Part shown: positions 19,053 to 33,715 of the stretch, in pieces
Layout of the letters: each line of letters opens with the position of its first letter
How positions within the stretch are numbered: position 1 is the first letter of the stretch
Virus record (IMG/VR): IMGVR_UViG_3300022698_000267
Span: 124,001-188,000 of that record
Length of the DNA stretch: 64,000 bases
Direction: 5' to 3' (one strand)
Position numbers and translations under genes: made by a program
Notes under the pieces: generated by a model
Seen by the model: only the letters and a program-made list of their open reading frames with translations
Told to the model about the DNA's origin: nothing
Databases searched by the model: none

Positions 19053-19081
19053 TTGACAAATCCTCTCATTTATACTATAAT
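19053..19081 (+). promoter_or_regulatory. sigma70-type promoter (copy 15)
   Basis: TTGACA-17-TATAAT. Confidence 0.85.
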
Positions 19082-19120
19082 AGATAGTACGATAAGAGGA
19101 TTTTTCATGAGGGGACTAAA

Positions 19121-19732
19121 ATGGATCAATTGAAAGTAGATGAATTAAAGACAGTCGAAACTTACCGGAAAGACAAATGTGCATGGTTTTGTTCGAAAAG
19201 AGATCCTTACTGGGAACTATCGAATATTGCTGCAATACCGGTTGTTTTTGGAGCAATAACGTGTAATTCTTCGGAACAACTTTATCAGGCTACCAAATAT
19301 GACTGGGATGTTGAATGTCTTCCCGAAGATGCTAAACCTGGAACTGATCCTAATGTGAAAAGAAGGATTCTGGCGGCGAAAAATGCTATGGGTTCTAAGA
19401 TGACACAGAAGTGTGCTGTAAAAGCTGGTCTAGTTCGGAGGGATTGGTATGCTCCAGAAGAGATGAGAATACATACAATGCTTTGGGTCCTGGAATTAAA
19501 ATTGTGGAATAACAAAGATACGTTTGGAGCGGTCCTTAAAAGCACTGGTGATTTGCCAATCGTTGAGAAGTCTCGTAAGGATAATTTCTGGGGAGCTATT
19601 CCTATGGGTATAGGGAATATGATTGGTTGTAACATATTGGGTAAACTTCTAACTATTTTGCGTGACGAAAAATTTGATAAAGTTTTGAAAGGCACTTTTA
19701 CTTACCCAATGGACGGTCTTTTTCTCCTGTAA
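19121..19732 (+). CDS. NADAR (YbiA/DUF1768) family protein
   Basis: LSN..SSEQLYQATKY, LKSTGD.PIVEKS.KDNFWG, GCNILGKLL. Confidence 0.85.
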   Translation: MDQLKVDELKTVETYRKDKCAWFCSKRDPYWELSNIAAIPVVFGAITCNSSEQLYQATKYDWDVECLPEDAKPGTDPNVKRRILAAKNAMGSKMTQKCAVKAGLVRRDWYAPEEMRIHTMLWVLELKLWNNKDTFGAVLKSTGDLPIVEKSRKDNFWGAIPMGIGNMIGCNILGKLLTILRDEKFDKVLKGTFTYPMDGLFLL

Positions 19733-19760
19733 AATAATTTAAAAAAGTTGTAAATAATAC

Positions 19761-19789
19761 TTGACAAAACCTCTAAAATCTGTTATACT
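19761..19789 (+). promoter_or_regulatory. sigma70-type promoter (copy 16)
   Basis: TTGACA-17-TATACT. Confidence 0.85.
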
Positions 19790-20064
19790 ACCTTTAAGAC
19801 GTTGGGGAGAACATTTAAATAAGGGGATAGAATGAGATACGATACTTGGGAAGAAAAACGGTTGGATGAAGAAATTGATCGTGAATGGTGGGAGAAAATG
19901 AAAGAAAATGTGAGAAAAGAGAAGGAGAAAAAAGAGAAGTAGTTATATGGGGGGTTCGCCCCCCAATTAAATCGTTAACTATAAGAACAAAGAAAGGGGG
20001 GGCTTATTATGCGCTATTGCTAAATTCTTCTAACTAAATGAACAAAATACTAAAACATAAAGTG

Positions 20065-20221
20065 TATGGGGCATAAGACCCCCGCTTTGCCGGCCAGCGC
20101 CCCTGGAACAGAATAAGATCGGGCGCCTAATGACCGGCCTGCCGGCCTAGTTGGGATGGGCCAATAATACATCCCCTTTTAATACATAGATATGGGCCTC
20201 AACGGGGGTGGGCACCCCATA
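20065..20221 (+). ncRNA. candidate GC-rich structured ncRNA (about 157 nt)
   Basis: TATGGGG/CCCCATA and ACCCCCG/CGGGGGT closing stems; arms GCGCCC/GGGCGC and GGGATG/CATCCC. Confidence 0.6.
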
Positions 20222-20350
20222 GATTAAACTAGTGGGCCGGGAGGTGCCAATGCTAAAAGTGACTTTAAAAAGCGCTTGCTTGCATATCAGGCGCTGAGAC
20301 ATAAATGTTTAAATATGCATTTACGTTATTATAAAAGTTCGCTTATCACA

Positions 20351-20398
20351 GAGAAAAGAAAGGGGTGCCGGCAAGGTCGACACCCCTTTTTCTTTCTC
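20351..20398. terminator. bidirectional intrinsic terminator-like hairpin
   Basis: GAGAAAAGAAAGGGGTG..CACCCCTTTTTCTTTCTC. Confidence 0.7.
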
Positions 20399-20413
20399 GA
20401 CAAAACATTATGT

Positions 20414-20953
20414 ATGTTAACAAGACAAGTAAAAGATCGTTACCCTTATGGTGCTCCTAATCCTAAACCACTTCCACAATGGTTTTATAAACTGGATCTG
20501 GACCGTTTTAACATCCTTGTTCGTAAACCTGTTGATGTTGTTAACTTTGTGATCGAACATATGATATATACTACGGATCAAGAAGCTCATCAAGTTCCTG
20601 AGTATTGGTTACAAAGTCCAGAAGATATATACACATGGTTATTTGATAAGAGAATGGATGATTGTGATGGTTCAGCTATTACAGTGGCAAGTATATTGTA
20701 TAGTCTTGGTAACCCTCACGTTCGTTTGGCATTAGGATATTATGGAAACGATGCTTATGCTAATACAAAAGTATTTCAGATGAACCATGCTTATTGTTTA
20801 CTAGAGATTGGTCCTAGTAAATACAAATTATTAGATGCAGTAGGTGATAGACCTGTAGAGTGGTTAGAGGACATTGATTTTTGCCCTCTTTACCATACAA
20901 TGATCAGTGCATCGGCAGATGGTAGAGTTTGGTATCATAATTCTTGGGTGTGA
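20414..20953 (+). CDS. transglutaminase-like cysteine protease fold protein
   Basis: DDCDGSAIT, NHAYC and LLDA give a plausible C-H-D triad. Confidence 0.65.
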   Translation: MLTRQVKDRYPYGAPNPKPLPQWFYKLDLDRFNILVRKPVDVVNFVIEHMIYTTDQEAHQVPEYWLQSPEDIYTWLFDKRMDDCDGSAITVASILYSLGNPHVRLALGYYGNDAYANTKVFQMNHAYCLLEIGPSKYKLLDAVGDRPVEWLEDIDFCPLYHTMISASADGRVWYHNSWV

Positions 20954-20955
20954 TA

Positions 20956-21150
20956 ATGAAAAGATTTATACTTGTCCTCTCATTCCTGTTCTTAGTTAGT
21001 TGTGCTAGCAGTACTGGTGTTGCTAATAGGGATATTGGTAAGATTCAGAGTCAGTTGGTTACTTTAACCGTCGAGTGTGAAAAAGGTTATCAACCTTCCT
21101 GTGATAAAATACCCTCCAAAAAGCAAGAACTTCAAAAATTACTTCAATAA
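20956..21150 (+). CDS. small lipoprotein
   Basis: MKRFILVLSFLFLVSC lipobox-like signal. Confidence 0.6.
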   Translation: MKRFILVLSFLFLVSCASSTGVANRDIGKIQSQLVTLTVECEKGYQPSCDKIPSKKQELQKLLQ

Positions 21151-21154
21151 GTAC

Positions 21155-21183
21155 TTGACATTTTCTCTACAATCCTATATAAT
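21155..21183 (+). promoter_or_regulatory. sigma70-type promoter (copy 17)
   Basis: TTGACA-17-TATAAT. Confidence 0.85.
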
Positions 21184-21189
21184 AGATAT

Positions 21190-21453
21190 ATGATATGGGA
21201 TAGAGCACAAGCAAAACAATATTTAAAGTCAATAGAATCTTTACTGCTTTCTCAAGGATATACAGCGGAAGTGGTTGGTTCAGTGGATAAAATCGGACAT
21301 TCAGACCATGATTTAGATATTCTTCTGATTCCGGTTAGAGAAGATTACACTTTCGAATATCTGTATGAGTTTTGGAAAGGTGATTTTTTTGGTTCTTGTT
21401 ATACAATGGCTGATGATCAAGGAAGAATGATAGATATATTCTTCGAGGAGTAG
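21190..21453 (+). CDS. minimal nucleotidyltransferase (Pol beta superfamily), apparently leaderless
   Basis: VVGSV..GHSDHDLDILL; ATG 6 nt after the -10 element. Confidence 0.6.
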   Translation: MIWDRAQAKQYLKSIESLLLSQGYTAEVVGSVDKIGHSDHDLDILLIPVREDYTFEYLYEFWKGDFFGSCYTMADDQGRMIDIFFEE

Positions 21454-21586
21454 ATATTATGGGAAAAAAGAAAGATAAATCATATAAAATACTAAAAGTA
21501 AGGGGACAGTTGTTACCACCAAATAAGGCCCATAAATCTAAGAAGGTTTATGATAGAAAGAAGTTAAAGTCATTCAATTAACAGGA

Positions 21587-22198
21587 GTGAACAAAATGTC
21601 TTATTGGGAAGCTATTAAGAATTTTTGGAATAATGTTTTGGGTGTAAAAGAGGAATTCTATTCAGTAGATGCATTAGATCAACTTACTAAAGAGCTTGAT
21701 GTGCCTGATTCAGAGGTAAAAACGTTACGTTCTAATCTTTCAAGCTATCTGAGTAGACTTGAAAAGAAAGGTATTTGTGAAGTGCAAAGAAACGCCTCTA
21801 GAAGGAATTTTGTTTTCAAAAAATTGGCTAACGACGACAATTTGAGAGGTAAGAGAACGCACAGAAAAATAAATAAAAAGGCAAATAAAAAGATCATACA
21901 TGTATATGAACCCATACAAAAGGAAGAAGCTGATTTAACAGATGTAACAGCTTTGGAGCTTGGAAATTCTATAATCTCCCTCATTAAAAATTTTGAGAGG
22001 CGTTTAAAAGCAAAGGACGCTGAGTTATCTGCTCGTTCTGAGGAGATTCGAGATCTTGTTGAGCGTAACAGTGATTTGGAAAGACAAGTTCGAAAGTGCA
22101 AAGAACGTATTCTGGAATTAAATAACAGTAACATGAAAAAGACTGGGAAAACTATTAATCTACATGCTTTGCAACAGATAGTAAAAGGAGCAAGTTAA
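21587..22198 (+). CDS. hypothetical protein, possible winged-HTH plus coiled coil
   Basis: LSSYLSRLEKKGICEV helix-wing pattern; heptad C-terminus. Confidence 0.55.
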   Translation: MNKMSYWEAIKNFWNNVLGVKEEFYSVDALDQLTKELDVPDSEVKTLRSNLSSYLSRLEKKGICEVQRNASRRNFVFKKLANDDNLRGKRTHRKINKKANKKIIHVYEPIQKEEADLTDVTALELGNSIISLIKNFERRLKAKDAELSARSEEIRDLVERNSDLERQVRKCKERILELNNSNMKKTGKTINLHALQQIVKGAS

Positions 22199-22671
22199 TG
22201 GTCTTGAAGAAGATTGTGTCTGGCGGTCAGACCGGTGCAGATAGGGCAGGACTGGATGTTGCAATAGACAATGACATTCCTCATGGTGGGTGGATTCCTA
22301 AAGGCAGAAGGACTGAAGAAGGTCCTTTAGACCCAAAATATAACCTCCAACAGACGAATTCCAGGGATTGGAAGCCAAGAACGGAAAGAAACTTAAGACT
22401 TTCAGATGGCACTATTATCTTAACATATGGACCAATACAAAAGAGGGGTGGTACCGCTTTAACGGTAAGACTTTGTGAGCAATTTAAAAAGCCTTGTCTT
22501 TATGTCGATATGAATACCGATGAGGTTGTTGAAGAAGACATTACCAAATGGTTACAAGATAATAATATCGAGGTGTTAAATGTAGCTGGTCCAAGGGCTA
22601 GTAAAGAACCAAATGTTTATCATGATGCATATGATATGTTAGAAACAGTTGTTAAAACATTGAAAAAATAA
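22198..22671 (+). CDS. putative molybdenum-carrier / SLOG family protein
   Basis: KIVSGGQTGADRAGLD, HGGWIPKGR, RTERN...SDGT, LNVAGPRASK. Confidence 0.9.
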   Translation: MVLKKIVSGGQTGADRAGLDVAIDNDIPHGGWIPKGRRTEEGPLDPKYNLQQTNSRDWKPRTERNLRLSDGTIILTYGPIQKRGGTALTVRLCEQFKKPCLYVDMNTDEVVEEDITKWLQDNNIEVLNVAGPRASKEPNVYHDAYDMLETVVKTLKK

Positions 22672-22797
22672 ACAGGGAGATTCGTCGGGCCCAAGATCAT
22701 GATGACGGTCTCCACAATGTAGGATTGGCCTTGTCCTACATGACCAAAAGCGACGATGCTGCTCCCATCGTCGCTTTTATTTTAAGGAGGATTTAAA

Positions 22798-23253
22798 ATG
22801 CCAGAAGAAGAAATTAACATAACAGAAGTAGCAAGTGAAAGTCTAAATTCAGGTTACGAAATGTATGTTCGAATAACTGATAATACTATGCTATACAAGG
22901 TCTTAGAAGACCATCTATCCTTGGAAGAAGTAAAATTGACCCCTGTATTCATTGTACATGATGCAAAAAGTTACGCACAGACAGTAAGGGCATGTATGAA
23001 GAAACTGAAGGAAGGTTGGACAGATGAAGATTTAGAAGCATACGAACGTAGAGGATTAAATCCTCCTACTACTTTAGAGGAATTCCTTGCAGAGATATAT
23101 GACATCACAGTCCCTTATTGGATGATAGAGGCAGTAGACATATCTATGTCCGGAGTTATGAATATAGATGACCCCTTTATAATTAGAAAAAAACTTTCTG
23201 AAGAAAATATTCCTTCAAACTATACTTTTATTACTGTCGATTCTCGATTATAA
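22798..23253 (+). CDS. hypothetical protein
   Basis: AAGGAGG RBS. Confidence 0.7.
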   Translation: MPEEEINITEVASESLNSGYEMYVRITDNTMLYKVLEDHLSLEEVKLTPVFIVHDAKSYAQTVRACMKKLKEGWTDEDLEAYERRGLNPPTTLEEFLAEIYDITVPYWMIEAVDISMSGVMNIDDPFIIRKKLSEENIPSNYTFITVDSRL

Positions 23254-23286
23254 ATACTAAAAGTATAGAAAATAGGAGGGTACTTA

Positions 23287-23754
23287 ATGCGTTGTAACGT
23301 AGGGATTAATCCAAAATATCTATTAGATCAGCATCTTATAGCTGAGTATAGAGAACTCCCAATGGTTGTTGTATCTTTACGAAAGAACGGTTGGTATATA
23401 AAAGGGAATGTTCCAGATACCTTTGGATTGGGGGAAGGACATATCAACTTTTTTAAAGTACGATTACGATATCTTTGTCGTAGACATGATGAAATAGTAA
23501 AAGAATGCTTCTCCAGAAATTTTAATTGTACAGCATTATCAATGTCTCCACTTTTCTATCCAGTTGGTTATTGTAAGAATTGGCTTCCAACTATTGATGA
23601 TTCTATGATAATTAGGAAACGTGTAGTAGAGAAAATTGAACAAAGAAATGAAAAAACACCTGGATTCTGGCGGCATTATAGTTGTAAATTATCAGATAGT
23701 GAGTTAGAAAAAGCAAAAGAGAGAATACTAGAAGGAGACTTATTTTATGTCTGA
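23287..23754 (+). CDS. denV: pyrimidine-dimer DNA glycosylase / endonuclease V-like
   Basis: MR.N..INP..L.DQHL.AEYRELP, FGLGEGHINFF. Confidence 0.85.
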   Translation: MRCNVGINPKYLLDQHLIAEYRELPMVVVSLRKNGWYIKGNVPDTFGLGEGHINFFKVRLRYLCRRHDEIVKECFSRNFNCTALSMSPLFYPVGYCKNWLPTIDDSMIIRKRVVEKIEQRNEKTPGFWRHYSCKLSDSELEKAKERILEGDLFYV

Positions 23755-24348
23755 TCAATTAGGTCCTTTGGAAGAAGCATGGTTGCAGTTTAATAAAGAT
23801 AATGATTTTTCTATTGAATGTGCTGAATGTTTTGAAGAAGGTTTCAAGGCAGCTTTAAACGATAAATTACGATTTCATTCTTCCTATTCTGGTTTTATTT
23901 CCACTTTAATAGTGGAGTTTGATATAGAGTTACAAAAGAAGACTGGTTGGGGTAGGAATGAGATAAAAGATAGATTTCAGAAGTGTTTAATTAGGGCATT
24001 GACAAAGACTTTAGACAGAGAAAAGGAGTAATGATGGATACTTCAAGTGTGCCTATCATAAAACTTGAGTTAGAGGGTATGAAGCACAGAATTATGACTC
24101 ATCTTGGTGTTCATGGAAGTGAACTTGGTGACATAATTAATGCTGGTATAGATAGAGCAATCAAATCTTATGACTTCGATGATAAGGTACTTTCTACAGT
24201 TCATGAGGTCTTGAATACAGAGATTGACAACTTTCTTAAATATGGTGGTGGTAGAGTTGTTATAAGAGAGGCCGTTGCAAAAACTCTTAATGAAGCTTTT
24301 AATATCTCTTCTAAACCAGATGAACCAAAACCACCAGATTCAGAATAA
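23747..24348 (+). CDS. two coupled hypothetical proteins (23747-24031 and 24031-24348)
   Basis: Overlapping start/stop codons, GGAG RBSs. Confidence 0.6.
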
Positions 24349-24363
24349 AGTTGTATATAATAC

Positions 24364-24392
24364 TTGACAAACCAGCTACAATCTATTATAAT
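24364..24392 (+). promoter_or_regulatory. sigma70-type promoter (copy 18)
   Basis: TTGACA-17-TATAAT. Confidence 0.8.
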
Positions 24393-24604
24393 GCATCTAA
24401 TGGTTGATTAATAATGGAGGTGGCAAAATGGATTTTTTAGGGTGGTCAATGCTTTTAGTTTTTATTTTTGGTGGAATAGCACAGTCCTTTCGGCACAATA
24501 AACTTTTGAACAATCTATTCGGTGGATTGGCTTTATTTACAGCTATCCCGGTGGTGATTGTGATAGCTTTACTTTAACATTTAAACCAAAGGAGAGGAGA
24601 GAAG

Positions 24605-25072
24605 ATGAGCAAAGTGGACTACAGTAAGATTCCGGACAGAGAAAAGGCTGCAAGGTTAATGGAGGAGGCTGCTGCAAGGGCTGCAAGGGAGTTGGAGTAT
24701 CAAACCCTCCATGATTCCTTGGCTTTGAATTATCGATATTTTCGCTTTCCAGTCCATTCCAGAAAGGGTAATTGCATACGAACCTGGTGGGTTTCAGTGA
24801 ACTTCGGTTGGAGAGTTGTTGACAGCCATATTGAGTATTCAGTGGCTCTTCAGTCATACAAAGACTTTTTCTCACGACCGAAGGCAAGGAAAGTTATAGA
24901 CGAAAGGTTTCAGATGGGTTTCACTCGTTTGCTTCCAGTCTTCTTCGACAGCAGCAAAGACATTGGTTCTTTACTGGCCTGGCATTACAACAATCTGGAT
25001 AAGAAGAAGAGGAATGAAATCTTTGGCATCGAAGAGGAAATTCCTTCTTATCTATCGAAAATTCCGCTTTAA
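24605..25072 (+). CDS. hypothetical protein
   Basis: GAGGAG RBS, 155 aa. Confidence 0.65.
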   Translation: MSKVDYSKIPDREKAARLMEEAAARAARELEYQTLHDSLALNYRYFRFPVHSRKGNCIRTWWVSVNFGWRVVDSHIEYSVALQSYKDFFSRPKARKVIDERFQMGFTRLLPVFFDSSKDIGSLLAWHYNNLDKKKRNEIFGIEEEIPSYLSKIPL

Positions 25073-25430
25073 CATACAGAACGATGAGTAATATAAAAAC
25101 CAAAACAATTCGAGACGTTAAAGTAGTGTTGTACCTTCCAGAGGATGTTGCTTTATGGTTAAAAGGTATAATGCAGAACCCTTTTTATGGTCAGACTCCT
25201 GATAACGAAAAAGAAATTGATTCAAAAAATAGACATGACCTTTGGGATGCTTTAAACGATTCGTTGCCACATAAAACATAACAATGTTGGGTTCATTTTA
25301 ACCTGTCCATAGTCGATGGTTGAATCGGCTCACCAACTAGTATGTGCGGGTGAATCTCCTTTCTTATCGTTGGGTTCCATTCTGGAGGTTGACTAGTTGC
25401 CTCCCACCTACCAAAAGTTACAAATACTAC

Positions 25431-25459
25431 TTGACTTTTCTTCTAAAATATACTATAAT
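25431..25459 (+). promoter_or_regulatory. sigma70-type promoter (copy 19)
   Basis: TTGACT-17-TATAAT. Confidence 0.8.
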
Positions 25460-25533
25460 TATGTAAAGGAAGAAAGAGCTACTCTTTCTTAACTTATAGA
25501 ACAAATACTAATACTTAGTAATGGAGTAGTAAA

Positions 25534-26151
25534 ATGACAAGAAAGAAAGATCCAAATATCATCAGAGTCGGCGATTTGGTTAAAGTCATGAATCCCCGAG
25601 TATTTGAAAGATGTGGTTATCCCATGTCTTTTGAGGATGCTGTGAAGGAAGTAGAGAACAAGTATGGTGACAAAATCAAAGAATTTATCTACAGTATTGA
25701 AGATGAAGCAAGAACTTACGTAATGGGTTTTACATTAGATAGAAATGAAATAACTAATAATGATCCTACTTTTAATAAGATAGTAAGGGCCTTGGCTTAC
25801 AATTACTTAGGAAGGAAAAAGTTTGGTGGTAGGGAAAGAAAGATTTATACTAAGGAAGTTGGACATCTTCTTCATCGGTTGGTGGTTGTTTGTAAAGTAA
25901 GGTTTGTAAAGACTGGTTTTTATATGCCTGGTGGTGGACCTTACTATTCTTATGAAGATCCTTATCCTGAATATGACCAAGCTTATTTGGATAAAGAAAA
26001 GACCCATAAAATATTGTCTGTTTCCAGCGTCACCAATGGACAATATGATGATTGGAAACATGGAAGACCTGTATCAGATATTGGTTGGTGGGAATTTGAT
26101 ATAGAAGCTGACAATGTAAAGAAGTTGTTTCCTAACAAAGAAGGAGATTAA
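25534..26151 (+). CDS. hypothetical protein
   Basis: GGAG RBS, 205 aa. Confidence 0.7.
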   Translation: MTRKKDPNIIRVGDLVKVMNPRVFERCGYPMSFEDAVKEVENKYGDKIKEFIYSIEDEARTYVMGFTLDRNEITNNDPTFNKIVRALAYNYLGRKKFGGRERKIYTKEVGHLLHRLVVVCKVRFVKTGFYMPGGGPYYSYEDPYPEYDQAYLDKEKTHKILSVSSVTNGQYDDWKHGRPVSDIGWWEFDIEADNVKKLFPNKEGD

Positions 26152-26551
26152 AATGGTTGGAATGTTTGTAACGGCTAAATCATCTCAATTGGGATACCCT
26201 GTTCAAGGTTGGGTAGCAGTAGAAGAACCAGAACTTATTATTGTTGGTATGTCTGGTCATCGGTATCGTTGTGATAAAGGGACAAAGTATGTGGAGGTAG
26301 ACAATCCACCAATTATGCCTCCAAAGGTACAAAGTGTGTTGGATGAATATAGAAATGCCCAGAATGAAGAGGAAGGAAATGTGGTGGGTTTATAAATGTG
26401 AAGACTGTGGAAGACTTTGGATTGATCCAGGTGGTGTTCCATTAAAGTGTTCTAATTGTGCAAGTAAAGACCGAGAACAATTATATGTCATAGAAAATCC
26501 CCGTAAAGAGTTAGAAAAGTATTTAAATGAAGAAAAAGGTTCTAATAATAC

Positions 26552-26580
26552 TTGACAAAGTTCTTCATTTAATATATAAT
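26552..26580 (+). promoter_or_regulatory. sigma70-type promoter (copy 20)
   Basis: TTGACA-17-TATAAT. Confidence 0.85.
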
Positions 26581-26614
26581 GGAAATAAAAGGTTGGGAAA
26601 TGGAGGATAAGATT

Positions 26615-27028
26615 ATGACACAACATAGAGTATTTGTATATGGAACATTGAGGAAAGGTCTTCAATTCAGTGATGCTTTGGTTAATGGTAAATTCGAAGG
26701 TAATGCAGAAACCAAGGAAAAATATGGTTTCGTTTTTCATCACTACCCTGCGGTTCTTCCTTTGCCGGATGATGTTCATGTTAAAGGAGAGATTTATACG
26801 GTCTCTTCGGCTGTTCTGGAATCTTTGGATCGGATCGAAGGTCATCCCCGCTTTTATCGTCGACGTCCTGTGACTGTTGTTAAAGAGAATGGATCGGAAG
26901 ATGTGGCCTGGATGTACTTTTTGGGTTCTGGTGCAAATAAAGCAGAGAGAGTTGGAATTCCAATACCTAATGGCGACTTCGTTCCTTTCTACAACAAGTA
27001 TTTTCGAGATAAAAAGGAAGCAGCATAA
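26615..27028 (+). CDS. gamma-glutamylcyclotransferase (AIG2-like)
   Basis: VFVYGTLRKG, VKGEIY, LDRIEG..FYRR, AWMY. Confidence 0.9.
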   Translation: MTQHRVFVYGTLRKGLQFSDALVNGKFEGNAETKEKYGFVFHHYPAVLPLPDDVHVKGEIYTVSSAVLESLDRIEGHPRFYRRRPVTVVKENGSEDVAWMYFLGSGANKAERVGIPIPNGDFVPFYNKYFRDKKEAA

Positions 27029-27371
27029 TGGTCACTGAAGTTAAAAGATTTAAAGCAAATGACGGTCAGGTTTTTAAAACCGAGAAAGAAGCAGAAGACC
27101 ATGAAAAGATTCTTGCTTTACAGGAGTGGTACGAGGAACATAAACTTTCTGGATCCACTTATGGTTCTTCTGTTAGTTGGGATGATTTTATCGATTGGTT
27201 AATAGATCATCGGGATGAAGCAAAGGCTATCCTTAAACTGTATAAATAAAGGAGAGAATAATGGAAGGTATAATCATAATCATCTTTTTTCTTTGGGCTG
27301 TGGCACAAATTGGTAAAGTGGTCAATCGTAAGAAAGACTAAAAAATTTTTCAAAAAAAGTTCAAATAATAC

Positions 27372-27400
27372 TTGACATTTCTACTCCATTCTGTTATACT
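27372..27400 (+). promoter_or_regulatory. sigma70-type promoter (copy 21)
   Basis: TTGACA-17-TATACT + GAGGTAAGAGGTTGGG leader. Confidence 0.85.
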
Positions 27401-27442
27401 AGAGGTAAGAGGTTGGGAGAACAGAACAAGGGAGGTAGTACA

Positions 27443-27853
27443 ATGGATTACAGAGTAGAACAAGTTAAGCAATTCGTCACAGCGGGTAGAGCTTTGTTCA
27501 CCATTAAAAATGAGGAGTCTGGCGGTCGATTCACCTTCAAAGTAAAACAACCCGATCGTGCTCGTGACTTTTGGTTCGTTAGTGTTTTGGATGGTCCAGA
27601 TAATTACTCCAATTACAAGTACATTGGCAGCATTTTTTCTACTGATTTCCGGAGAACAACAAAGAGTCGGGTCAGTTCAGATTCACCCTGTTTTAAAGCG
27701 TTCAAGTGGTTTTGGAAACGGGTAGTGGTTGATCAGTTACCTGAGAAAGTAAGTGTTTATCATGAAGGTCGATGTGGACGATGTGGTCGGCGTCTAACGG
27801 TTCCAGAAAGTATCCAAAGTGGCTTCGGTCCGGAGTGTATTACAAGAGTCTAA
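27443..27853 (+). CDS. DUF6011-like zinc-binding phage protein
   Basis: HEGRCGRCGRRLTVPESIQSGFGPEC. Confidence 0.8.
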   Translation: MDYRVEQVKQFVTAGRALFTIKNEESGGRFTFKVKQPDRARDFWFVSVLDGPDNYSNYKYIGSIFSTDFRRTTKSRVSSDSPCFKAFKWFWKRVVVDQLPEKVSVYHEGRCGRCGRRLTVPESIQSGFGPECITRV

Positions 27854-27956
27854 TATCCACCCTAACCACCCCTCCCAAAGGTGCTATTCTAACGGATAGC
27901 ACCTTTTCTATTTATATAAAACATAAGGTAATCGTAAAATTAATCGACATTTTATT

Positions 27957-29594
27957 ATGGCAAAAGGTTCGAAGAAGATAAAACAATTACCCACAAGGCC
28001 CACCAGTGTAAATGCTGTTAAACGTAGCCCCTATGTTAGACAACAGCATGTATCTACTAGTAAAGATAGATTGAGACCAAAGAAGGAAAGAACTTCTCTT
28101 CAAGAAGAAATTGGTAATCTGGAAAAGTCTTATAAGGATAGAGATCAGTATGGATCTATTACCGATAAGGGGAAGAAGTATATAAGTGATTTTGTAAAGG
28201 GAATGAAAGATAGGCCTCAGGATCAGTTGCATACTATAGCTGAGAGTGGTCTTGGTATAGTAGAGGTTGATTCCTTTTTATCGGATCATTTAGACTCTGA
28301 TGGTATGGCTAAGTTAGCATTAAATACCAAAGATCCTTTCGCTAGGTCAATGTTAACCGATAGGATGGATAATAAATCTTTACATAAACTATTGGACAAA
28401 GAAAAAAATCCTGAAGTTATTCAAAGAATGGCTTTAAATATTGATCAGAAGGGATTACATAGGATTGTAGATAGACCAGAGACTTCTGGAGATGATTATT
28501 CAATATTAATAACCGCATTAAATAGGATGGATACTGCTGGTGCTAAGAAGATAATGGATAAAGCAAATTGGCAGAAGTGGTTAAAGAATGACACTGGGGA
28601 AGAACATGTTGGTGATCATGGTTCTAGATTTGCAAAGAAATTGTTCAATAAATTAGGAATGGACGATTTAAGAAAGTTTATTGATGGAGGAGGCACAGCA
28701 AAGAATGCTTTTGGAGATGATATTGCTAAGGATTCTTTTCTGCAACGTGCTTCATATTCTGAGCTTAAGAAAAAGTTTCCTAATGAGAGGGTCACTAAAT
28801 TTAAGGAAAAGCATAAAGGATTGCTGGAAGGTGTTGATAAGTTAAAGACTCATGAAGAACTGGTTAATCACTTCTCAAAGAATTTACCAGACAACATACC
28901 AGAAGATGAGAATATGCCTGGTCTAAAGTCCTTATTTAGAGAGAACACAACTCATTTTTCCCAACAAATGGATTATTGGTTGTTTACAATGGGACAAGAA
29001 CCAACTCATAATTTAAAGTTTGCTACTATTGATTCTTTTGGTGGTCAATTTAATAGCACTAAGAATCCTAAACACAGAGAAATGTCAGAACCTTTCTTAA
29101 GAGATAGATATGATGGTGTTGGTCCTGAAATTAAAGCAGACTTGGCTAGAGGTTTACAAATATCTAAAGCTTTAAGTAGATCCATTCTAGATAAAAGATT
29201 TCCTGGACAGGATACCATTGAGTTATTTAGAGGAACATCTAGGCCAGAAGTTAACATCAAAAGGAACAAAGAAGGTGTTCCACAAGCTTCTGCTTCTTCT
29301 GATCCACTTTCCTCATGGACACCAAATCCAACAACAGCATCATCTTTTGCTAATCAAAGGGGTGTGTTGTCTAGTAAGAAGGGACTGGTGCTAAGAACTC
29401 ATGCTAATAAGGACAATGTTATAGGGACCAACCAGTTTTGGAGTAAGGAGGGTGCTCAGCAAGAACACATTGTGAATTTTTCTCGTCCTGTTAGTGTGGA
29501 TGTGATGAGAGATTATAACAATGATTATCAGCATGATGATTGGGATCAGTTCTGGGAACATGATCCATATGCAGAAGAGGAAGAACCTTACTGA
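27957..29594 (+). CDS. large protein with probable C-terminal ADP-ribosyltransferase fold
   Basis: Basic N-term like 1298; ELFRG ... LSSWT.N..TA..FA ... QQEHIV (R-S-E pattern). Confidence 0.55.
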   Translation: MAKGSKKIKQLPTRPTSVNAVKRSPYVRQQHVSTSKDRLRPKKERTSLQEEIGNLEKSYKDRDQYGSITDKGKKYISDFVKGMKDRPQDQLHTIAESGLGIVEVDSFLSDHLDSDGMAKLALNTKDPFARSMLTDRMDNKSLHKLLDKEKNPEVIQRMALNIDQKGLHRIVDRPETSGDDYSILITALNRMDTAGAKKIMDKANWQKWLKNDTGEEHVGDHGSRFAKKLFNKLGMDDLRKFIDGGGTAKNAFGDDIAKDSFLQRASYSELKKKFPNERVTKFKEKHKGLLEGVDKLKTHEELVNHFSKNLPDNIPEDENMPGLKSLFRENTTHFSQQMDYWLFTMGQEPTHNLKFATIDSFGGQFNSTKNPKHREMSEPFLRDRYDGVGPEIKADLARGLQISKALSRSILDKRFPGQDTIELFRGTSRPEVNIKRNKEGVPQASASSDPLSSWTPNPTTASSFANQRGVLSSKKGLVLRTHANKDNVIGTNQFWSKEGAQQEHIVNFSRPVSVDVMRDYNNDYQHDDWDQFWEHDPYAEEEEPY

Positions 29595-29605
29595 GAGGAG
29601 ATTCT

Positions 29606-30346
29606 ATGTCACAGTTAGTTTTTGCCGGACATCCAAAGGCTAGTTTGGTATGGCATCAGTATGTTTATGGTAGATTTTGTAAGGAATTAAATTTATCTAT
29701 ACAGTGGGTAACCCGTTTAAGTGATTCTAAGAAGTATTTAGATGAAAATAAGTGTGATTTCCTATTTTACAAGAGTTCAACAGGCTCTCAGATTATGGAA
29801 GATATGATAGGATTTCATATCTATAGAAATCCACGTGATATGTTGGTATCCGGATACTATTCATCTAAATTCAGCCATCCAGCTGATAACCATCCAGTCC
29901 TTCAAGAACACAGAAAGAAATTGCATCAAGTTAACATGGAAGAAGGATTGATACTGGAGATGGATTATTTGAATGATTACTTCAATGACATGAGAGGATG
30001 GTGCTGGGACAATACGAATATCCTTAACATACCTATGGAGGAACTATTTAGTTCACCAGCCGAGATCCTGTTAAACACAATAAAAATTGCAAGACATATG
30101 GGTTTTCTTAAAGGTTATGGTTATGAAAGACCCACTTATCTTACCGAAGCTACCATAACAAGGACTTTAGATGATTATAGCTTTGAAAATCTTACAAAAA
30201 GGAAGAAAGGTGAGGAAGATTCAAAACATCATTTTAGAAAAGGTACACCAAATGATTGGAAAAACCATTGGACGGATAAAGTAGATAAGGAATTTACGGC
30301 TCGTTATGGTGACATTATTGCTGAGTACGATTATGATAAAGATTAG
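29606..30346 (+). CDS. sulfotransferase-domain protein
   Basis: HIYRNPRDMLVSGY (3'-PB motif), HFRKG..NDWKNH. Confidence 0.85.
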   Translation: MSQLVFAGHPKASLVWHQYVYGRFCKELNLSIQWVTRLSDSKKYLDENKCDFLFYKSSTGSQIMEDMIGFHIYRNPRDMLVSGYYSSKFSHPADNHPVLQEHRKKLHQVNMEEGLILEMDYLNDYFNDMRGWCWDNTNILNIPMEELFSSPAEILLNTIKIARHMGFLKGYGYERPTYLTEATITRTLDDYSFENLTKRKKGEEDSKHHFRKGTPNDWKNHWTDKVDKEFTARYGDIIAEYDYDKD

Positions 30347-30468
30347 GAGCAGTTAGCACATACGTAACCTTTCTTTTTATCTTCCAATTTACTCCCGCAT
30401 TTCCAACAGATTCCATTCTTAAACATCTCTTTTTTGTCTGCTTTTGTTAACTTCTTTCTCTTAGCCAA
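30343..30468 (-). CDS. small zinc-ribbon protein
   Basis: AGGAG RBS, TTG start; MAKRKKL..CWKCGSKL..YVCANCS. Confidence 0.5.
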   Translation of the reverse strand: MAKRKKLTKADKKEMFKNGICWKCGSKLEDKKKGYVCANCS

Positions 30469-30550
30469 GAAAAACTCCTATCATTGATTGTTTATTTTTC
30501 ATACTCCTAATGTTTTTCATCACTTTAATTAAAAAAAGTTCAAAAAGTAC

Positions 30551-30579
30551 TTGACATTTTTAACAAATTCTGTTATACT
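30551..30579 (+). promoter_or_regulatory. sigma70-type promoter (copy 22)
   Basis: TTGACA-17-TATACT. Confidence 0.85.
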
Positions 30580-30736
30580 AGAGGTAAGAGGTTGGGGAAA
30601 TACATAATGGAGGTGACGAAATGTTATTTAATGAGATCAAATCAAACATTGTCCATTATTTAATAGCCGTTACAGCAGCCAGCAGTATTTTACTTCTTCT
30701 CATTTACTAAAATTTTAAAAAAACTTCAAAAAGTAC

Positions 30737-30765
30737 TTGACAAAATCGGTTGCAGATTATATAAT
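30737..30765 (+). promoter_or_regulatory. sigma70-type promoter (copy 23)
   Basis: TTGACA-17-TATAAT. Confidence 0.85.
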
Positions 30766-30817
30766 ACGTTTAAGTGGTTGGGGAAATGGTTAAAATTTTA
30801 AAAGGGGGGTAGTTAAA

Positions 30818-31093
30818 ATGATCGAGAAAATCCAGAGATATTTCGAGTTGAAGGACCAAATCAAAGTTTTGGACGATGAGTTGAAAGCCATTCGAAGTGA
30901 AGTTTCCACCCTATTTGGTGGGGCTAAAGTTGAAATCGAAGTCGACGGTTCCAAGGTCCGTTGCCAAACCAAAAAACGTTCCACCAAAAGTTGTGATTGG
31001 TCCACGTTTAAGGAAGTCAATGAGCATCTTTACAATCAGATAGTCACCGAATCTGAGTCTTCCTACTATGAGCTGAGAAAATTGGCTCGCTAA
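30818..31093 (+). CDS. paralog of 12927-13202
   Basis: High identity, same stop position (TAA here, TAG there). Confidence 0.8.
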   Translation: MIEKIQRYFELKDQIKVLDDELKAIRSEVSTLFGGAKVEIEVDGSKVRCQTKKRSTKSCDWSTFKEVNEHLYNQIVTESESSYYELRKLAR

Positions 31094-31244
31094 TCATCTC
31101 CTAAAAGTGGTGGTGGGGCAACCCACCATCCACGTTTAACTTGCCGAACAAAGCCTCCAGCGTTTAACTATATGACCAAAGCTACTTTCAGCTATCGAAT
31201 GGAAACGCTTGTCAAAATTATTTGCAAGAAAGTTCAAAAAGTAC

Positions 31245-31273
31245 TTGACAAAATCGGTTGTAGCCTATATAAT
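31245..31273 (+). promoter_or_regulatory. sigma70-type promoter (copy 24)
   Basis: TTGACA-17-TATAAT. Confidence 0.85.
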
Positions 31274-31321
31274 AGAGGCAAGTGGTTAGGGAAATGGTTA
31301 AAATTTAAGGGAGGTAGTAAA

Positions 31322-31807
31322 ATGCAAATACATGAATTGAACAGCGGTTTCTTACGATCACCTGAAGCAATAAATAATGTGCAGATGGTACGAGGTGGAG
31401 CACCGATTGAAGTCAAGAAGGATGATGAGCAGAAGACATACGTTGCAATCGGTAACGTTCAGGGCAGAAGCCTTGCCAAAGGAATGGTCGTGTTGGCCTC
31501 CTACAACGAAGGTAATCAAGGAGCTGACTTGGTTGAGGTGCTAGGGTTCACAAGTGATAAGGAACACTATGGTGAGGGTGGTGTTGCCTTTGAATCAGCA
31601 AAAGAAATGCTCAAACATTATGGTGTAAAGAGCCTTCAAGAGCTGGAAGACCTGCAGGACAAGAATGAGTATGGGTACCACTCTTATTTAGTTGTTCGGG
31701 ATTTGAACGATGACGAAGAAGGTGCCTGGTATTACCTCTACGAAGGTCGATGGGCAAGGGGTTCCGGTGCGGAGAAATTATCCTTCGTCAGAATGAATTT
31801 ACAGTAA
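31322..31807 (+). CDS. hypothetical protein
   Basis: GGAGG RBS behind promoter. Confidence 0.7.
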   Translation: MQIHELNSGFLRSPEAINNVQMVRGGAPIEVKKDDEQKTYVAIGNVQGRSLAKGMVVLASYNEGNQGADLVEVLGFTSDKEHYGEGGVAFESAKEMLKHYGVKSLQELEDLQDKNEYGYHSYLVVRDLNDDEEGAWYYLYEGRWARGSGAEKLSFVRMNLQ

Positions 31808-31949
31808 CGATCAGGGGGCTTCGGCCCCCATTTTCATAACCTGCCTGGCGTTTAACTATAAGACCAAAACAGCTAACGGATACTGGAATTTGTACGTCAA
31901 TGATTCCTTGAAATATCAAATACTATTTGCAAGAAAGTTCAAAAAGTAC

Positions 31950-31978
31950 TTGACATTTTGTCTCCAAGACATTATAAT
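31950..31978 (+). promoter_or_regulatory. sigma70-type promoter (copy 25)
   Basis: TTGACA-17-TATAAT. Confidence 0.85.
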
Positions 31979-32227
31979 AGAGGTAAGAGGTTGGGGGAAA
32001 TACTGCTAAAGGGAGATACAAAATGGCAAAGAAATTATTGGTTGATAAGGTAAGGGTGACAGGGAAAGACGAAAATGGCTACCGTGCTATCGAAGTTGAT
32101 AGGGCTGGTGAACCTTTAAGTTTTCCCATTATGTTTTCCGATACAAGCATCTCGCAACAAGGCATTGACAAGCTTATTAAGCTGATAAAGAAAGAAATGG
32201 CCTTAATATAAAAAGTTCAAAAAGTAC

Positions 32228-32256
32228 TTGACAAAACCTCCTCAAGACATTATAAT
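32228..32256 (+). promoter_or_regulatory. sigma70-type promoter (copy 26)
   Basis: TTGACA-17-TATAAT. Confidence 0.85.
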
Positions 32257-32298
32257 AGAGGTAAGAGGTTGGGGAAATAGAAAAGAGGGGGAAATAAA

Positions 32299-32535
32299 AT
32301 GGAGCAAGTTATAGAGAATTTAGAAGTACAGGGAATTACCTGCAGGGCCAACGTAATTACCGAACATGGTGACTTTGAAGTGGTTGGGGTTATCGCCGGT
32401 AACGAAGTTGATCAATTAAGGCTTGAAACCATTCTCGAGAACAGGAAAGCGGAATTTGATTTTGAGAACCTTGTTGAGAGAAGGCTCATTGAAGAAGCAG
32501 AGGAAGATTATCAAGAACCGGACGATTGGTACTAA
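32299..32535 (+). CDS. small acidic hypothetical protein
   Basis: GAGGGGG RBS behind promoter. Confidence 0.65.
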   Translation: MEQVIENLEVQGITCRANVITEHGDFEVVGVIAGNEVDQLRLETILENRKAEFDFENLVERRLIEEAEEDYQEPDDWY

Positions 32536-32745
32536 TAATCTAATGGGGGCTTCGGCCCCCAAAGGAGGTATAAAAATGTTCGAGTCGACTCCGTGGTGGT
32601 TAATTTTGGTAGAAATTTCTGCTGGTGGTATTTGGTGTGTAGCAGTAACCTACTACCTTATTAAAATGTGCAGGGCAGTTTCGAGTTAAAATCATAGGGG
32701 GGCTTAAAAAGCCCCCATTTCTTTGCAAGAAAGTTCAAAAAGTAC

Positions 32746-32774
32746 TTGACATTTCTACCATAATCCGTTATAAT
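32746..32774 (+). promoter_or_regulatory. sigma70-type promoter (copy 27)
   Basis: TTGACA-17-TATAAT. Confidence 0.85.
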
Positions 32775-33055
32775 AGAGGTAAGAGGTTGGGGAACCTAAT
32801 TATAAAATGGGAGGTAGCAAATGGAAAAAGTAAAAGGAGTAGACAGGAAGACTTACAAAAAAGCGCTTCGGTATCTTTCGAAGAAATTCGGTCTCAAGAA
32901 GTCAGATTTTGAATTCGAGGCAGCCTGGATTGATGAGTACGTTCGTTGTCTCCTTTTCAGCATCATCAATGAGAAATCCCGTCTGTACAAAAGCACCGTT
33001 GGCTACCAGCTGTAGTCGATTTCTACAAGCCCCCACTTCTGGGGGCTTTTTCAGC

Positions 33056-33500: not shown

Positions 33501-33519
33501 ATTTAAACATATACTAAAA

Positions 33520-33660
33520 CATTTAAGTGATTGGATTGACATTCCCCATGCTCAAGCCTTTCACCATAGTCCATTCGACCTTCTGTATATTGCGGCTCTC
33601 CTCAACCTAGACTTAATAGCCGTGATTTGCTACCTCCATAAAGGTCGAATGGACTCCTCA
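33520..33660 (+). ncRNA. candidate trans-acting small RNA
   Basis: Perfect 15-bp stem 33568-33582/33641-33655; inner stem GCGGCT/AGCCGT; C-rich loops. Confidence 0.6.
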
Positions 33661-33715
33661 TTTATAAATTATCAAATACTAAAATTGATTTAAAGAATTC
33701 ATACTATTTAAGGAT

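What the first reader, a model, noticed from the sequence alone, without database searches (positions are those of the whole stretch)
33511..33660. Candidate sRNA whose two loops are complementary to the shared leader and RBS of the early promoter cassettes
Seen: a perfect 15-bp stem (33568-82/33641-55) and an inner stem GCGGCT/AGCCGT. The 20-nt apical loop carries TCCTCAACCT (33599-608), complementary with one G-U to AGGTTGGGGA, the leader motif in many cassettes. It continues AGACTTAA, which could pair with the TTAAG upstream of that motif across a 3-nt bulge. The unpaired 3' segment ATTTGCTACCTCC (33625-37) is a perfect complement of GGAGGTAGCAAA(T) at 32810 and 12915, and pairs with wobbles to 12020, 12581, 24416 and 31310. 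A further TTCCCCA lies at about 33542. The RNA sits behind the non-sigma70 ATACTAAAA motif. Inference: a later-expressed RNA that silences the early regulon through its standardised 5' UTR.
Basis: partly seen in the sequence, partly recalled or inferred. Interest (0 to 1): 0.85.

Follow-up and report, generated by a model that had tools for sequence, protein, structure and literature searches.

The report
Candidate phage sRNA against early leaders
A strongly folded, probably non-coding RNA gene in an uncultured jumbo phage exposes C-rich loops that match the shared leader and ribosome-binding site of the phage's own early genes better than any other spot in the window, so it may switch those genes off, but nothing yet shows that it is expressed or conserved.

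Summary
Positions 33524-33668 (+) fold into a small hairpin with a UCCCC loop and a large hairpin with a perfect 15-bp stem (z about -7). The 20-nt apical loop complements the whole conserved early leader across a 3-nt bulge. Positions 33625-33637 are an exact 13-nt complement of the RBS-to-start region at 32810.

The window has 27 sigma70 cassettes. ATACTAAAA is about 10-fold enriched, conserved in related phages, and precedes topoisomerase II and denV genes, so it is probably a middle-class promoter.

The pairing is better than chance. The element ranks first of 25,542 windows for combined leader-plus-RBS complementarity. The loops beat shuffles (RBS 0/1000, leader 16/1000). Cassette mRNAs are preferred over other start regions (Fisher 7e-7 and 2e-4).

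The function is unproven:
- No transcript data exist.
- No canonical terminator follows the hairpin.
- The hairpin has no homologue, so covariation cannot be tested.
- The core folds equally well on both strands.
- C-rich tracts occur elsewhere in the early region.

One related phage carries two tandem ATACTAAAA-led hairpin units containing an anti-SD sequence, which hints at a family.

Verdict: a real structured element and a plausible early-regulon silencer (about 0.4). It is a new variant of a known kind and of moderate interest.

The parts
33501..33519 (+). Promoter-like motif P1 (ATTTAAAC-AT-ATACTAAAA). It contains TATACT but has no -35 element.
   Evidence: ATACTAAAA occurs 15 times against 1.5 expected and lies before gene starts. 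It is conserved before homologous genes in relatives. The extended context is shared with the L242 unit 1 promoter.
33524..33567 (+). 5' part of the candidate RNA. It has a leader-like start (UAAGUGAUUGG) folded into hairpin 1 (33527-33564), whose loop UCCCC lies within UUCCCCA.
   Evidence: The fold is -11.1 kcal/mol with z -3.1. UUCCCCA is complementary to UGGGGAA of the leader, but this is not better than shuffles (p 0.21).
33568..33655 (+). Hairpin 2. It has a perfect 15-bp lower stem (33568-82/33641-55), an asymmetric internal loop, an upper stem of 3+9 bp and a 20-nt apical loop.
   Evidence: Searches give -34.7 kcal/mol and z -6.8. No Rfam family matches.
33598..33617 (+). Apical loop carrying the anti-leader: UCCUCAACCU (33599-608), a bulge AGA, then CUUAA (33612-16).
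   Evidence: It forms 10 bp with one G-U to AGGUUGGGGA. With the 3-nt bulge it covers UUUAAG.GGUUGGGGA at -18 kcal/mol. It ranks 7-11 in the window scan and 16/1000 shuffles do as well.
33625..33637 (+). Anti-RBS segment AUUUGCUACCUCC. The CCUCC half is unpaired in the 3' internal loop; the AUUUGC half is weakly paired.
   Evidence: It is an exact complement of 32810-22 and a near complement of 5 or more other cassette RBSs. It ranks 1 in the window scan and 0/1000 shuffles do as well.
33654..33668 (+). 3' tail CUCCUCAUUUAUAAA. It is a third CUCC motif and has no real U-tract.
   Evidence: Sequence. The terminator scan does not flag it. Pairing is not better than shuffles for specificity.
33676..33684 (+). 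Second ATACTAAAA motif (P2), 40 nt before the ATG at 33716 of the orphan 124/127-aa ORF that is followed by the hybrid histidine kinase.
32744..32835 (+). Example target: the last early cassette. It has a perfect sigma70 promoter, the leader AGGUUGGGGA (32784-93), the RBS-to-start GGAGGUAGCAAAUG (32810-23) and a 64-aa ORF.
   Evidence: Predicted accessibility-corrected pairing is -11 to -14 kcal/mol for both loops.
735..32835 (+). The early regulon inside the window: 27 cassettes (UP element, ACTTGACA, 17 nt, TATAAT). About 16 carry the leader TAAG.GGTT[GA]GGGAA and many carry the RBS GGAGGTAGYAAAATG.
   Evidence: The same cassette and leader occur in related metagenomic phage fragments.

Best explanation
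This is a gene for a small non-coding RNA of about 130-145 nt on the + strand. It would be transcribed from the first ATACTAAAA motif, which belongs to a phage-specific, probably middle-class promoter type that also precedes topoisomerase II and denV genes.

The RNA folds into two hairpins that expose C/U-rich sequences. The 20-nt apical loop can kiss the standard 5' leader (UUUAAG.GGUUGGGGA) of the host-RNAP-transcribed early mRNAs. The internal-loop segment AUUUGCUACCUCC can cover their standard Shine-Dalgarno-to-start region. Binding would block ribosome loading, create double-stranded substrates for nucleases, or both. That would help shut down early protein synthesis once middle transcription begins.

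Shown here: the structure, the motif enrichment, the complementarity, and its specificity for cassette mRNAs. Inferred: transcription, the 3' end, the timing, and repression.
For: - Structure: z -7.1 and -6.8. The complementary segments sit in loops.
- No convincing ORF: codon score is +0.135, like spurious open frames (0.018 +/- 0.205). There is no ATG or SD, and IMG gene calling did not call it in three assemblies.
- Promoter motif: 15 copies against 1.5 expected, before gene starts. It is conserved before the 72-aa gene homologue and before the homologue of the window 3090 site in relatives. It precedes topoisomerase II subunits and denV. A second copy directly serves the next ORF, which implies that the first serves something else.
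- Anti-RBS: rank 1 of all 20-mers outside the cassettes' own antisense.
- Combined leader plus RBS score: rank 1 of 25,542 windows of 145 nt, -41.6 against a mean of -23.0 with sd 4.7.
- Shuffles: 0/1000 for the RBS segment and 16/1000 for the leader loop.
- Cassette mRNAs against 83 other start regions: 10/21 vs 2/83 and 6/21 vs 1/83 at -8 kcal/mol or below (Fisher 7e-7 and 2e-4). The same holds.
- A relative (L242/L243) has two tandem ATACTAAAA-led non-coding hairpin units that carry CCUCCUUUU. They are stable only on the sense strand and share the promoter context and the 5' TTGGATT.
Against: - There is no expression data.
- No canonical intrinsic terminator follows the hairpin, so the RNA could simply be part of a longer transcript.
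- No homologue of hairpin 2 was found in IMG/VR, metagenome fragments of relatives, GTDB genomes or other fetched parts of the same contig. The three assemblies that contain it are identical, so there is no covariation.
- The core hairpin folds equally well on the minus strand.
- The anti-leader match alone is modest (rank 7-11, p about 0.016).
- The cassettes are paralogous copies, so many targets amount to one motif match.
- The anti-leader lies 5' of the anti-RBS in the RNA, while the leader lies 5' of the RBS in the mRNA. One RNA cannot form one continuous duplex with both sites.
- C-rich, G-free tracts occur in other early-region trailers, so C-richness may have another cause.
- The units in the relative hide their anti-SD inside the stem and show no anti-leader loop.
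Confidence: 0.4

Rival explanations
1. The hairpin is a transcript-boundary or processing element. It would act as a 3'-end-forming, insulating or RNase III-type processing hairpin between the upstream unit (the 72-aa gene) and the 124-aa/kinase operon, or as a terminator for the phage-modified polymerase. The complementarity to early leaders would be incidental.
For: - It lies exactly between two transcription units, with a promoter-like motif on each side.
- The geometry resembles T7 RNase III sites, from general knowledge: a 15-bp lower stem, an asymmetric internal loop and a 12-bp upper stem.
- In the relative L242, each hairpin is likewise followed within 5 nt by the next ATACTAAAA motif or by an early cassette.
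- The core folds equally well on both strands.
- Other long perfect stems exist in the window.
Against: - It does not explain why this element has the best anti-RBS match and the best combined complementarity in 128 kb of scanned strand, nor why those matches sit in loops.
- The phage's ordinary terminators are short GC-rich hairpins with U-tracts, unlike this one.
- This rival does not exclude a processed RNA that also acts in trans.
Confidence: 0.25
2. The element is a cis-acting 5' untranslated leader of the 124-aa ORF and histidine-kinase operon. Transcripts from P1 would run through the hairpins into the ORF, and the structure would tune stability or translation of that mRNA.
For: - No terminator signature lies between P1 and the ORF.
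- Tandem promoters are common.
- 5'-UTR-derived structured RNAs are the commonest class of sRNA reported in the jumbo phage 201phi2-1 (PMC11512511).
Against: - The C-rich loops do not pair with the RBS of the downstream ORF or of the kinase. Totals are -4.4 to +5.9 kcal/mol.
- The ORF has its own ATACTAAAA motif 40 nt upstream.
- In L242 the homologous-looking units are followed by an early cassette, not by such an operon.
Confidence: 0.1
3. It is a real sRNA with a different main job. It could be a general anti-Shine-Dalgarno competitor or sponge, with three CUCC/CCUCC motifs that mimic the 16S rRNA 3' end. It could act on host mRNAs or titrate an RNA-binding factor, or it could stabilise early mRNAs by capping their 5' ends rather than silencing them.
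For: - There are four exposed C/U-rich motifs.
- The units in the relative carry CCUCCUUUU, which is 16S-tail-like, paired to an RBS-like GGAAAAGGGGGG.
- The direction of regulation cannot be read from sequence.
- From general knowledge, 5'-end pairing by sRNAs can stabilise mRNAs in Gram-positive bacteria.
Against: - The 13-nt match extends well beyond the SD core into the phage-specific spacer GUAGCAAAU.
- The apical loop matches the non-SD leader.
- Other start regions in the window are clearly poorer partners.
- The host is unknown, so host targets cannot be tested.
Confidence: 0.12
4. It is not an RNA device at all. It could be a DNA-level element, such as an inverted repeat for a protein or a recombination or replication site. 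Alternatively, the open frame 33493-33693 (66 aa, with a hydrophobic stretch) could encode a small protein.
For: - A perfect 15-bp inverted repeat that is strand-symmetric in stability.
- It lies next to an array of four direct repeats that looks like a set of protein-binding sites and is conserved in relatives.
- The 72-aa gene next to it is inverted in relatives.
- The open frame's codon score of +0.135 is within the range of real small genes.
Against: - The arms are 58 nt apart, which is unusual for a protein-binding palindrome.
- The inner region adds RNA-type pairing with G-U pairs on the + strand.
- The open frame has only a TTG start that overlaps the upstream gene and a weak SD. It scores like spurious frames (32% of them score as high). 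It was not called in three assemblies.
- The order of the anti-leader and anti-RBS pieces does not fit an inverted cassette relic (sequence).
Confidence: 0.06

Closest known systems
P1/P7 c4 antisense RNA (Rfam C4 family)
   Same: It is a phage-encoded, structured small RNA. Two separate exposed segments pair with two short sites on a phage mRNA, one of which covers the ribosome-binding site, and this blocks translation in trans (general knowledge).
   Different: c4 is cut out of the same transcript as its single target operon (icd-ant) in temperate enterobacterial phages. Here the proposed targets are dozens of separately promoted early mRNAs that share a standard leader. No Rfam match was found even at E up to 10.
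C-rich-loop sRNAs of Gram-positive bacteria (RsaE/RoxS type)
   Same: They have several C-rich motifs in hairpin loops and unpaired stretches that bind G-rich Shine-Dalgarno regions of many mRNAs (general knowledge). The UCCCC, CUCCUC and CCUCC motifs here are displayed the same way.
   Different: Those sRNAs are host-encoded, regulate metabolism and end in canonical terminators. This one is phage-encoded, has no canonical terminator, shows no sequence or structure match in Rfam, and extends its match into phage-specific leader and spacer sequence.
T4 RegB endoribonuclease
   Same: It is a functional analogue. It inactivates many early mRNAs together by recognising a motif in their Shine-Dalgarno regions (GGAG, consensus GGAGRAYARAA) to speed the early-to-middle switch (PMC3014915). 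This phage shows T4-like traits: strong sigma70 early promoters, many tRNAs, topoisomerase II and denV.
   Different: RegB is a protein nuclease and is itself an early gene. Here the recogniser would be an RNA made from a later promoter class.
sRNAs mapped in jumbo phages such as 201phi2-1 and phiKZ (ONT-cappable-seq)
   Same: They are short transcription units in intergenic or 5'-UTR positions of giant phages, where a start site is followed shortly by a 3' end. Their function is unknown (PMC11512511).
   Different: Those were found by transcriptomics and have no proposed targets. This one is predicted from sequence alone but has a specific proposed target set. The phage lineages are unrelated.
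T7-type RNase III processing hairpins
   Same: They are intergenic hairpins with two stems separated by an asymmetric internal loop, placed between transcription units (general knowledge).
   Different: The apical loop here is 20 nt and the lower stem is a perfect 15 bp. Cleavage cannot be tested here. RNase III sites are not expected to complement other mRNAs' leaders.

Membership tests
Trans-acting base-pairing sRNA (anti-RBS type) | An independent transcription unit with its own promoter and a defined 3' end. | tested here: inconclusive
   A promoter-like motif is enriched, well positioned and conserved. No canonical terminator follows, and there are no transcript data.
Trans-acting base-pairing sRNA (anti-RBS type) | A stable scaffold with the pairing segments unpaired. 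| tested here: met
   Fold z is -7.1 and -6.8. The anti-leader lies in the 20-nt apical loop. The CCUCC half of the anti-RBS lies in the internal loop, while the AUUUGC half is weakly paired.
Trans-acting base-pairing sRNA (anti-RBS type) | Complementarity to target translation-initiation regions beyond chance, and target-specific. | tested here: met
   The element ranks 1 for anti-RBS and for the combined score. Shuffles reach it 0/1000 and 16/1000 times. Cassette against other start regions gives Fisher 7e-7 and 2e-4.
Trans-acting base-pairing sRNA (anti-RBS type) | Conservation with co-variation of seed and target, or compensatory changes in stems. | tested here: inconclusive
   Only identical copies exist. 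No homologue of hairpin 2 was found in relatives' fragments or collections. A relative has similar promoter-plus-hairpin units with a different architecture.
Rfam families (C4 antisense RNA, RsaE/RoxS, tRNA, tmRNA, riboswitches and others) | A covariance-model match. | tested here: not met
   Only tRNAs reach the gathering threshold in the window. At E up to 10 the region gives only a meaningless miRNA-precursor hit at 17.7 bits against a cut-off of 171. ARAGORN finds nothing there.
Intrinsic (Rho-independent) terminator | A short G+C-rich hairpin with a small loop, followed directly by a U-tract. | tested here: not met
   The scan does not flag it. The stem encloses 58 nt, and the tail is CUCCUCAUUUAUAAA. 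Ordinary terminators of this phage fit the rule.
RNase III processing site (T7 type) | About two helical turns of near-continuous duplex with an internal loop, and cleavage by RNase III. | not testable with these tools
   The geometry is compatible: 15 bp plus 12 bp around an asymmetric loop. Cleavage needs an experiment.
Small protein-coding gene | A start codon with an SD, coding statistics above background, and homologues. | tested here: not met
   The only start is a TTG overlapping the upstream gene, with a weak SD. Its codon score is indistinguishable from spurious frames. It was not called in three assemblies.

The most novel reading that the evidence does not exclude
This would be an RNA counterpart of T4 RegB. 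A middle-class sRNA of an uncultured jumbo-phage clade would recognise the standardised 5' leader and ribosome-binding site carried by dozens of host-polymerase-transcribed early mRNAs and switch off the whole early regulon at once. It would belong to a small family of ATACTAAAA-driven anti-Shine-Dalgarno hairpin RNAs seen in at least two related phages.
Probability: 0.3. Interest if true: 0.8.

Novelty: new variant of a known kind. Interest (0 to 1): 0.55.

Why it matters
Phage-encoded sRNAs are now being detected in many phages, but almost none has a known target. Global shut-off of early genes is so far attributed to proteins, such as T4 RegB and promoter shut-down factors.

If this element works as proposed, a phage would have standardised the 5' ends and ribosome-binding sites of its early mRNAs so that a single later-made RNA can address all of them. 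That is a compact temporal switch. It would be directly testable with reporters even without the unknown host, and it could be useful as an orthogonal regulatory part.

Even if the trans-acting model fails, the locus defines two things worth having for an uncultured jumbo-phage clade: a conserved non-sigma70 promoter motif and a class of short hairpin units.

Tried and rejected
- **Known RNA family.** Rfam at gathering and at E up to 10, and ARAGORN, found nothing at the element.
- **Relatives for covariation.**
  - Neighbour proteins: the 127-aa ORF is an orphan. The kinase has only bacterial relatives at 39% identity or less over at least 20% of the query. Homologues of the 72-aa protein lie in non-syntenic or inverted contexts.
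  - DNA patterns for the loops, promoter, leader and the RNA's own promoter context: IMG/VR holds only the phage itself. GTDB genomes and several AT-rich patterns gave chance hits.
  - The single metagenome scan found true relatives by their cassettes, but only as short early-region fragments without the hairpin.
- **Sister assemblies.** The three copies are 100% identical.
- **Relic of an inverted early cassette.** Rejected. On the minus strand the RBS-like piece precedes the leader-like piece, which is the reverse of a real cassette.
- **General sense-strand enrichment of anti-leader words.** Not found. CCYHAACC occurs 4 times on the + strand, about as expected.
- **First accessibility-corrected scan.** Using near-optimal full-length duplexes failed for technical reasons, and a full 27-target scan timed out. 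Both were replaced.
- **Neighbouring GC-rich non-coding stretches as structured RNAs.** Rejected by z-scores of 0.07 and -0.5.
- **Strand of the core hairpin from G-U asymmetry.** Inconclusive.

Full report
**Context.** The window is positions 124001-188000 of IMGVR_UViG_3300022698_000267, a 273.5-kb uncultured jumbo phage. The same phage was assembled in two sister samples, and the region studied is 100% identical in all three. The first 33 kb of the window is an early region on the + strand. It holds 19 tRNA genes and many small ORFs. These are served by 27 nearly identical promoter cassettes: an A-rich UP element, ACTTGACA, 17 nt, then TATAAT or TATACT. About 16 of the cassettes continue into the leader TAAG.GGTT[GA]GGGAA. 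Many end in a standard ribosome-binding region, GGAGGTAGYAAAATG. Standard code fits the ORFs in this window.

**Observation check.** The region 33511-33680 folds at -46.3 kcal/mol on the + strand, with z -7.1 and 0 of 200 shuffles as good.
- Hairpin 1 (33527-33564) has the loop UCCCC.
- Hairpin 2 has the perfect 15-bp stem 33568-82/33641-55, a 2 x 10-nt asymmetric internal loop (3' side UACCUCCAUA), an upper stem of 3+9 bp with three G-U pairs, and a 20-nt apical loop at 33598-33617.
- The loop decamer 33599-608 is the reverse complement of AGGTTGAGGA, which gives one G-U against the leader decamer.
The loop can therefore cover the whole conserved leader at about -18 kcal/mol.
- Positions 33625-37 are an exact 13-nt complement of 32810-22 and a near complement of at least five other cassette RBSs.
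- ATACTAAAA occurs at 33511 and 33676, and 15 times in the window against 1.5 expected.

The description is therefore correct. Two small corrections apply. Half of the anti-RBS segment is weakly paired in the minimum-energy fold. The exact leader decamer is present in only four cassettes.

**Is the complementarity more than chance?** I scanned every 20-mer of both strands against consensus leader and RBS targets.
- Outside the cassettes' own antisense strand, the anti-RBS site is the best in the window (-23.8 kcal/mol). The apical loop ranks 7th to 11th for the leader.
- For 145-nt windows scored on both targets together, the element ranks first of 25,542 (-41.6 against a mean of -23.0 with sd 4.7). 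The next + strand window scores -36.8.
- Shuffling each segment while keeping its composition gives 0/1000 as good for the RBS segment and 16/1000 for the loop. The UUCCCCA loop and the 3' tail are not better than shuffles.
- With accessibility terms, cassette mRNAs are far better partners than the other 83 start regions. Using identical -55..+15 windows, 10/21 against 2/83 reach -8 kcal/mol for the loop (Fisher 7e-7), and 6/21 against 1/83 for the RBS segment (2e-4).

Two caveats matter. The cassettes are paralogous, so this amounts to one motif pair. My rough window-level estimate for the joint event is a few in a thousand.

**The promoter motif.**
- Position: six of the ten intergenic copies of ATACTAAAA lie 18-51 nt before a start codon on the coding strand.
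- Genes served: the motif precedes both topoisomerase II subunits and a denV-type endonuclease.
- Conservation: in related phages it is kept before the homologue of the 72-aa gene and before the homologue of the window 3090 site.
- Core elements: it has a -10-like core but no -35 element (sequence).

This fits a phage-directed, middle-type promoter class distinct from the sigma70 cassettes. The timing itself is an inference. The next ORF (33716/33725) has its own copy 40 nt upstream, so the copy at 33511 is followed by about 200 nt with no convincing gene. The open frame across the element has only a TTG start inside the upstream gene and a weak SD. Its codon score of +0.135 matches spurious open frames, 32% of which score as high. 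IMG did not call it.

**Relatives.**
- IMG/VR holds no relative, only the phage itself.
- One metagenome scan for promoter plus leader found true relatives as short fragments: L219-L222, L226-L228, L231 and L232. They carry the same cassettes and leader, with variants GGTTAGGG and GTTGGTTGAG. The leader is therefore a family trait.
- Homologues of the 72-aa protein (67-71% identity) lie on two of these contigs, inverted relative to the early genes.
- A covariance model of the element found nothing in any relative or in other fetched parts of the contig.
- L242/L243 do carry two tandem non-coding units on the early-sense strand. Each starts with ATACTAAAACATTAA and contains a 13-bp hairpin, GGAAAAGGGGGGC...GUCCUCCUUUUCC. 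These hairpins are stable on the sense strand (z -5.1 and -3.9) but not on the antisense strand (z -1.8).
- The promoter context of these units (ATTTAAAC..ATA.TACTAAAACATT.AA) and the 5' TTGGATT resemble the window element. BLAST does not find this significant (E 2.4), and the anti-SD of these units is buried in the stem.

I read this as a hint that short ATACTAAAA-driven hairpin RNAs with anti-SD sequence are a family feature. It is not evidence for the anti-leader mechanism.

**Points against the silencing model.**
- No canonical terminator follows the hairpin, whereas the phage's ordinary terminators are textbook.
- The core hairpin is as stable on the minus strand as on the plus strand.
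- Other long stems exist in the window.
- C-rich, G-free tracts occur in several early-unit trailers, although a strict anti-leader word is not enriched on the sense strand.
- The two pairing segments are in crossed order relative to their targets. Simultaneous binding would need two separate kissing contacts or two RNA molecules.

**Explanation and comparison.** The best-supported reading, at about 0.4, is a middle-expressed trans-acting sRNA that binds the standard leader and RBS of early mRNAs.
- In logic it is closest to the two-site c4 RNA of P1/P7 and to C-rich-loop sRNAs of Gram-positive bacteria.
- In biological role it is closest to T4 RegB, which inactivates early mRNAs through their Shine-Dalgarno motif (PMC3014915).
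- It is not a member of any Rfam family.
- Jumbo phages are known to make many short intergenic or 5'-UTR RNAs of unknown function (PMC11512511).

The main rival, at about 0.25, is a boundary or processing hairpin whose complementarity is incidental. Lesser rivals are a cis-acting leader of the kinase operon, an sRNA with other targets or the opposite sign of regulation, and a DNA-level element or small peptide.

**Verdict.** The element is real and its match to the early regulon is the best in the window. Expression, 3' end, timing and effect are all untested, and no covariation is available. If the model is true, it is a new variant of a known kind. Interest is moderate (0.55).

Noticed in passing
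window 33056-33219 (four copies); single copies at 11587, 13286, 14384, 16633, 18443, 19975, 20030, 25489, 31164, 31852; L226 minus strand about 2000-2120 (five copies): The 17-nt motif CTAACTTAATGAMCAAA (looser form YTAACTWNNNGAMCAAA) occurs 16 times against 2 expected, 14 of them on the + strand. Just upstream of the 72-aa gene it forms an array of four copies, separated by GC-rich spacers of 28-39 nt. Related phages carry arrays of five copies at 21-34 nt spacing next to the same gene. As RNA the array is not structured (z -0.5), so it may be a set of protein-binding sites (iteron-like) or another promoter class.
   Followed up: partly
L242 plus 1795-1976 (= minus 8244-8425); identical in L243: In a related phage, two tandem non-coding units lie just before an early cassette. 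Each is an ATACTAAAACATTAA motif followed by a 13-bp hairpin that pairs an RBS-like GGAAAAGGGGGG with a 16S-tail-like CCUCCUUUUCC. The hairpins are stable only on the sense strand.
   Followed up: partly
window 20056-20227: A 170-nt GC-rich stretch with no gene called here sits in an AT-rich phage. It lies directly behind CTAACTAAATGAACAAA plus ATACTAAAACATAAAGTG and a leader-like TATGGGG. It is not more structured than shuffles (z 0.07) and has no Rfam match.
   Followed up: partly
window 651-724, 11598-11627, 13229-13258, 27849-27878; L226 minus about 1880-1910; L222 minus about 7580-7700: C-rich, G-free tracts lie in the 3' trailers of early transcription units, usually just before the terminator hairpin. 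Several contain anti-leader or anti-SD words, for example CCCTAACCAC (complementary to GTGGTTAGGG) and CCCCTCCC. They could be Rho-loading sites, 3'-UTR-derived sRNA seeds or 5'-3' end-pairing partners of the G-rich leaders.
   Followed up: partly
window 34139-38011: The phage encodes a 1290-aa hybrid sensor histidine kinase (MASE3, several PAS domains, HisKA, HATPase, receiver). Its database relatives reach at most 39% identity over at least 20% of the query, and those carrying a source name are bacterial. It follows an orphan 124/127-aa ORF. This is unusual cargo for a phage.
   Followed up: partly
window 3867-3944 and 52231-52336: One of the 19 tRNA genes has the anticodon CTA (an amber suppressor; ARAGORN labels it Pyl), although standard code fits the ORFs in this window. 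Rfam also calls a 106-nt tRNA-like match at 52231-52336 that ARAGORN does not find. It may be interrupted by an intron or degenerate.
   Followed up: partly
window 33282-33500; L240 2625-2846; L242 5001-5219: The conserved 72-aa gene next to the element lies on the same strand as the early genes in this phage, but is inverted in two relatives. In one of those relatives it has its own ATACTAAAACAT motif. This points to a local inversion in the lineage.
   Followed up: partly
window 12907-13201 and 30798-31092: A 295-nt direct repeat at 76% identity marks paralogous early genes that share the cassette, leader and RBS. This shows that the early cassettes spread by duplication.
   Followed up: no
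window 59291-59400, 18391-18440, 56107-56155: Other long, near-perfect stems (14-16 bp) occur in the window, some inside coding regions. The one at 59291-59400 is the most structure-biased 110-nt window in the scan.
   Followed up: no
window 47764-47846: A 21-nt tandem repeat with about 4 copies lies inside the 623-aa minus-strand gene.
   Followed up: no
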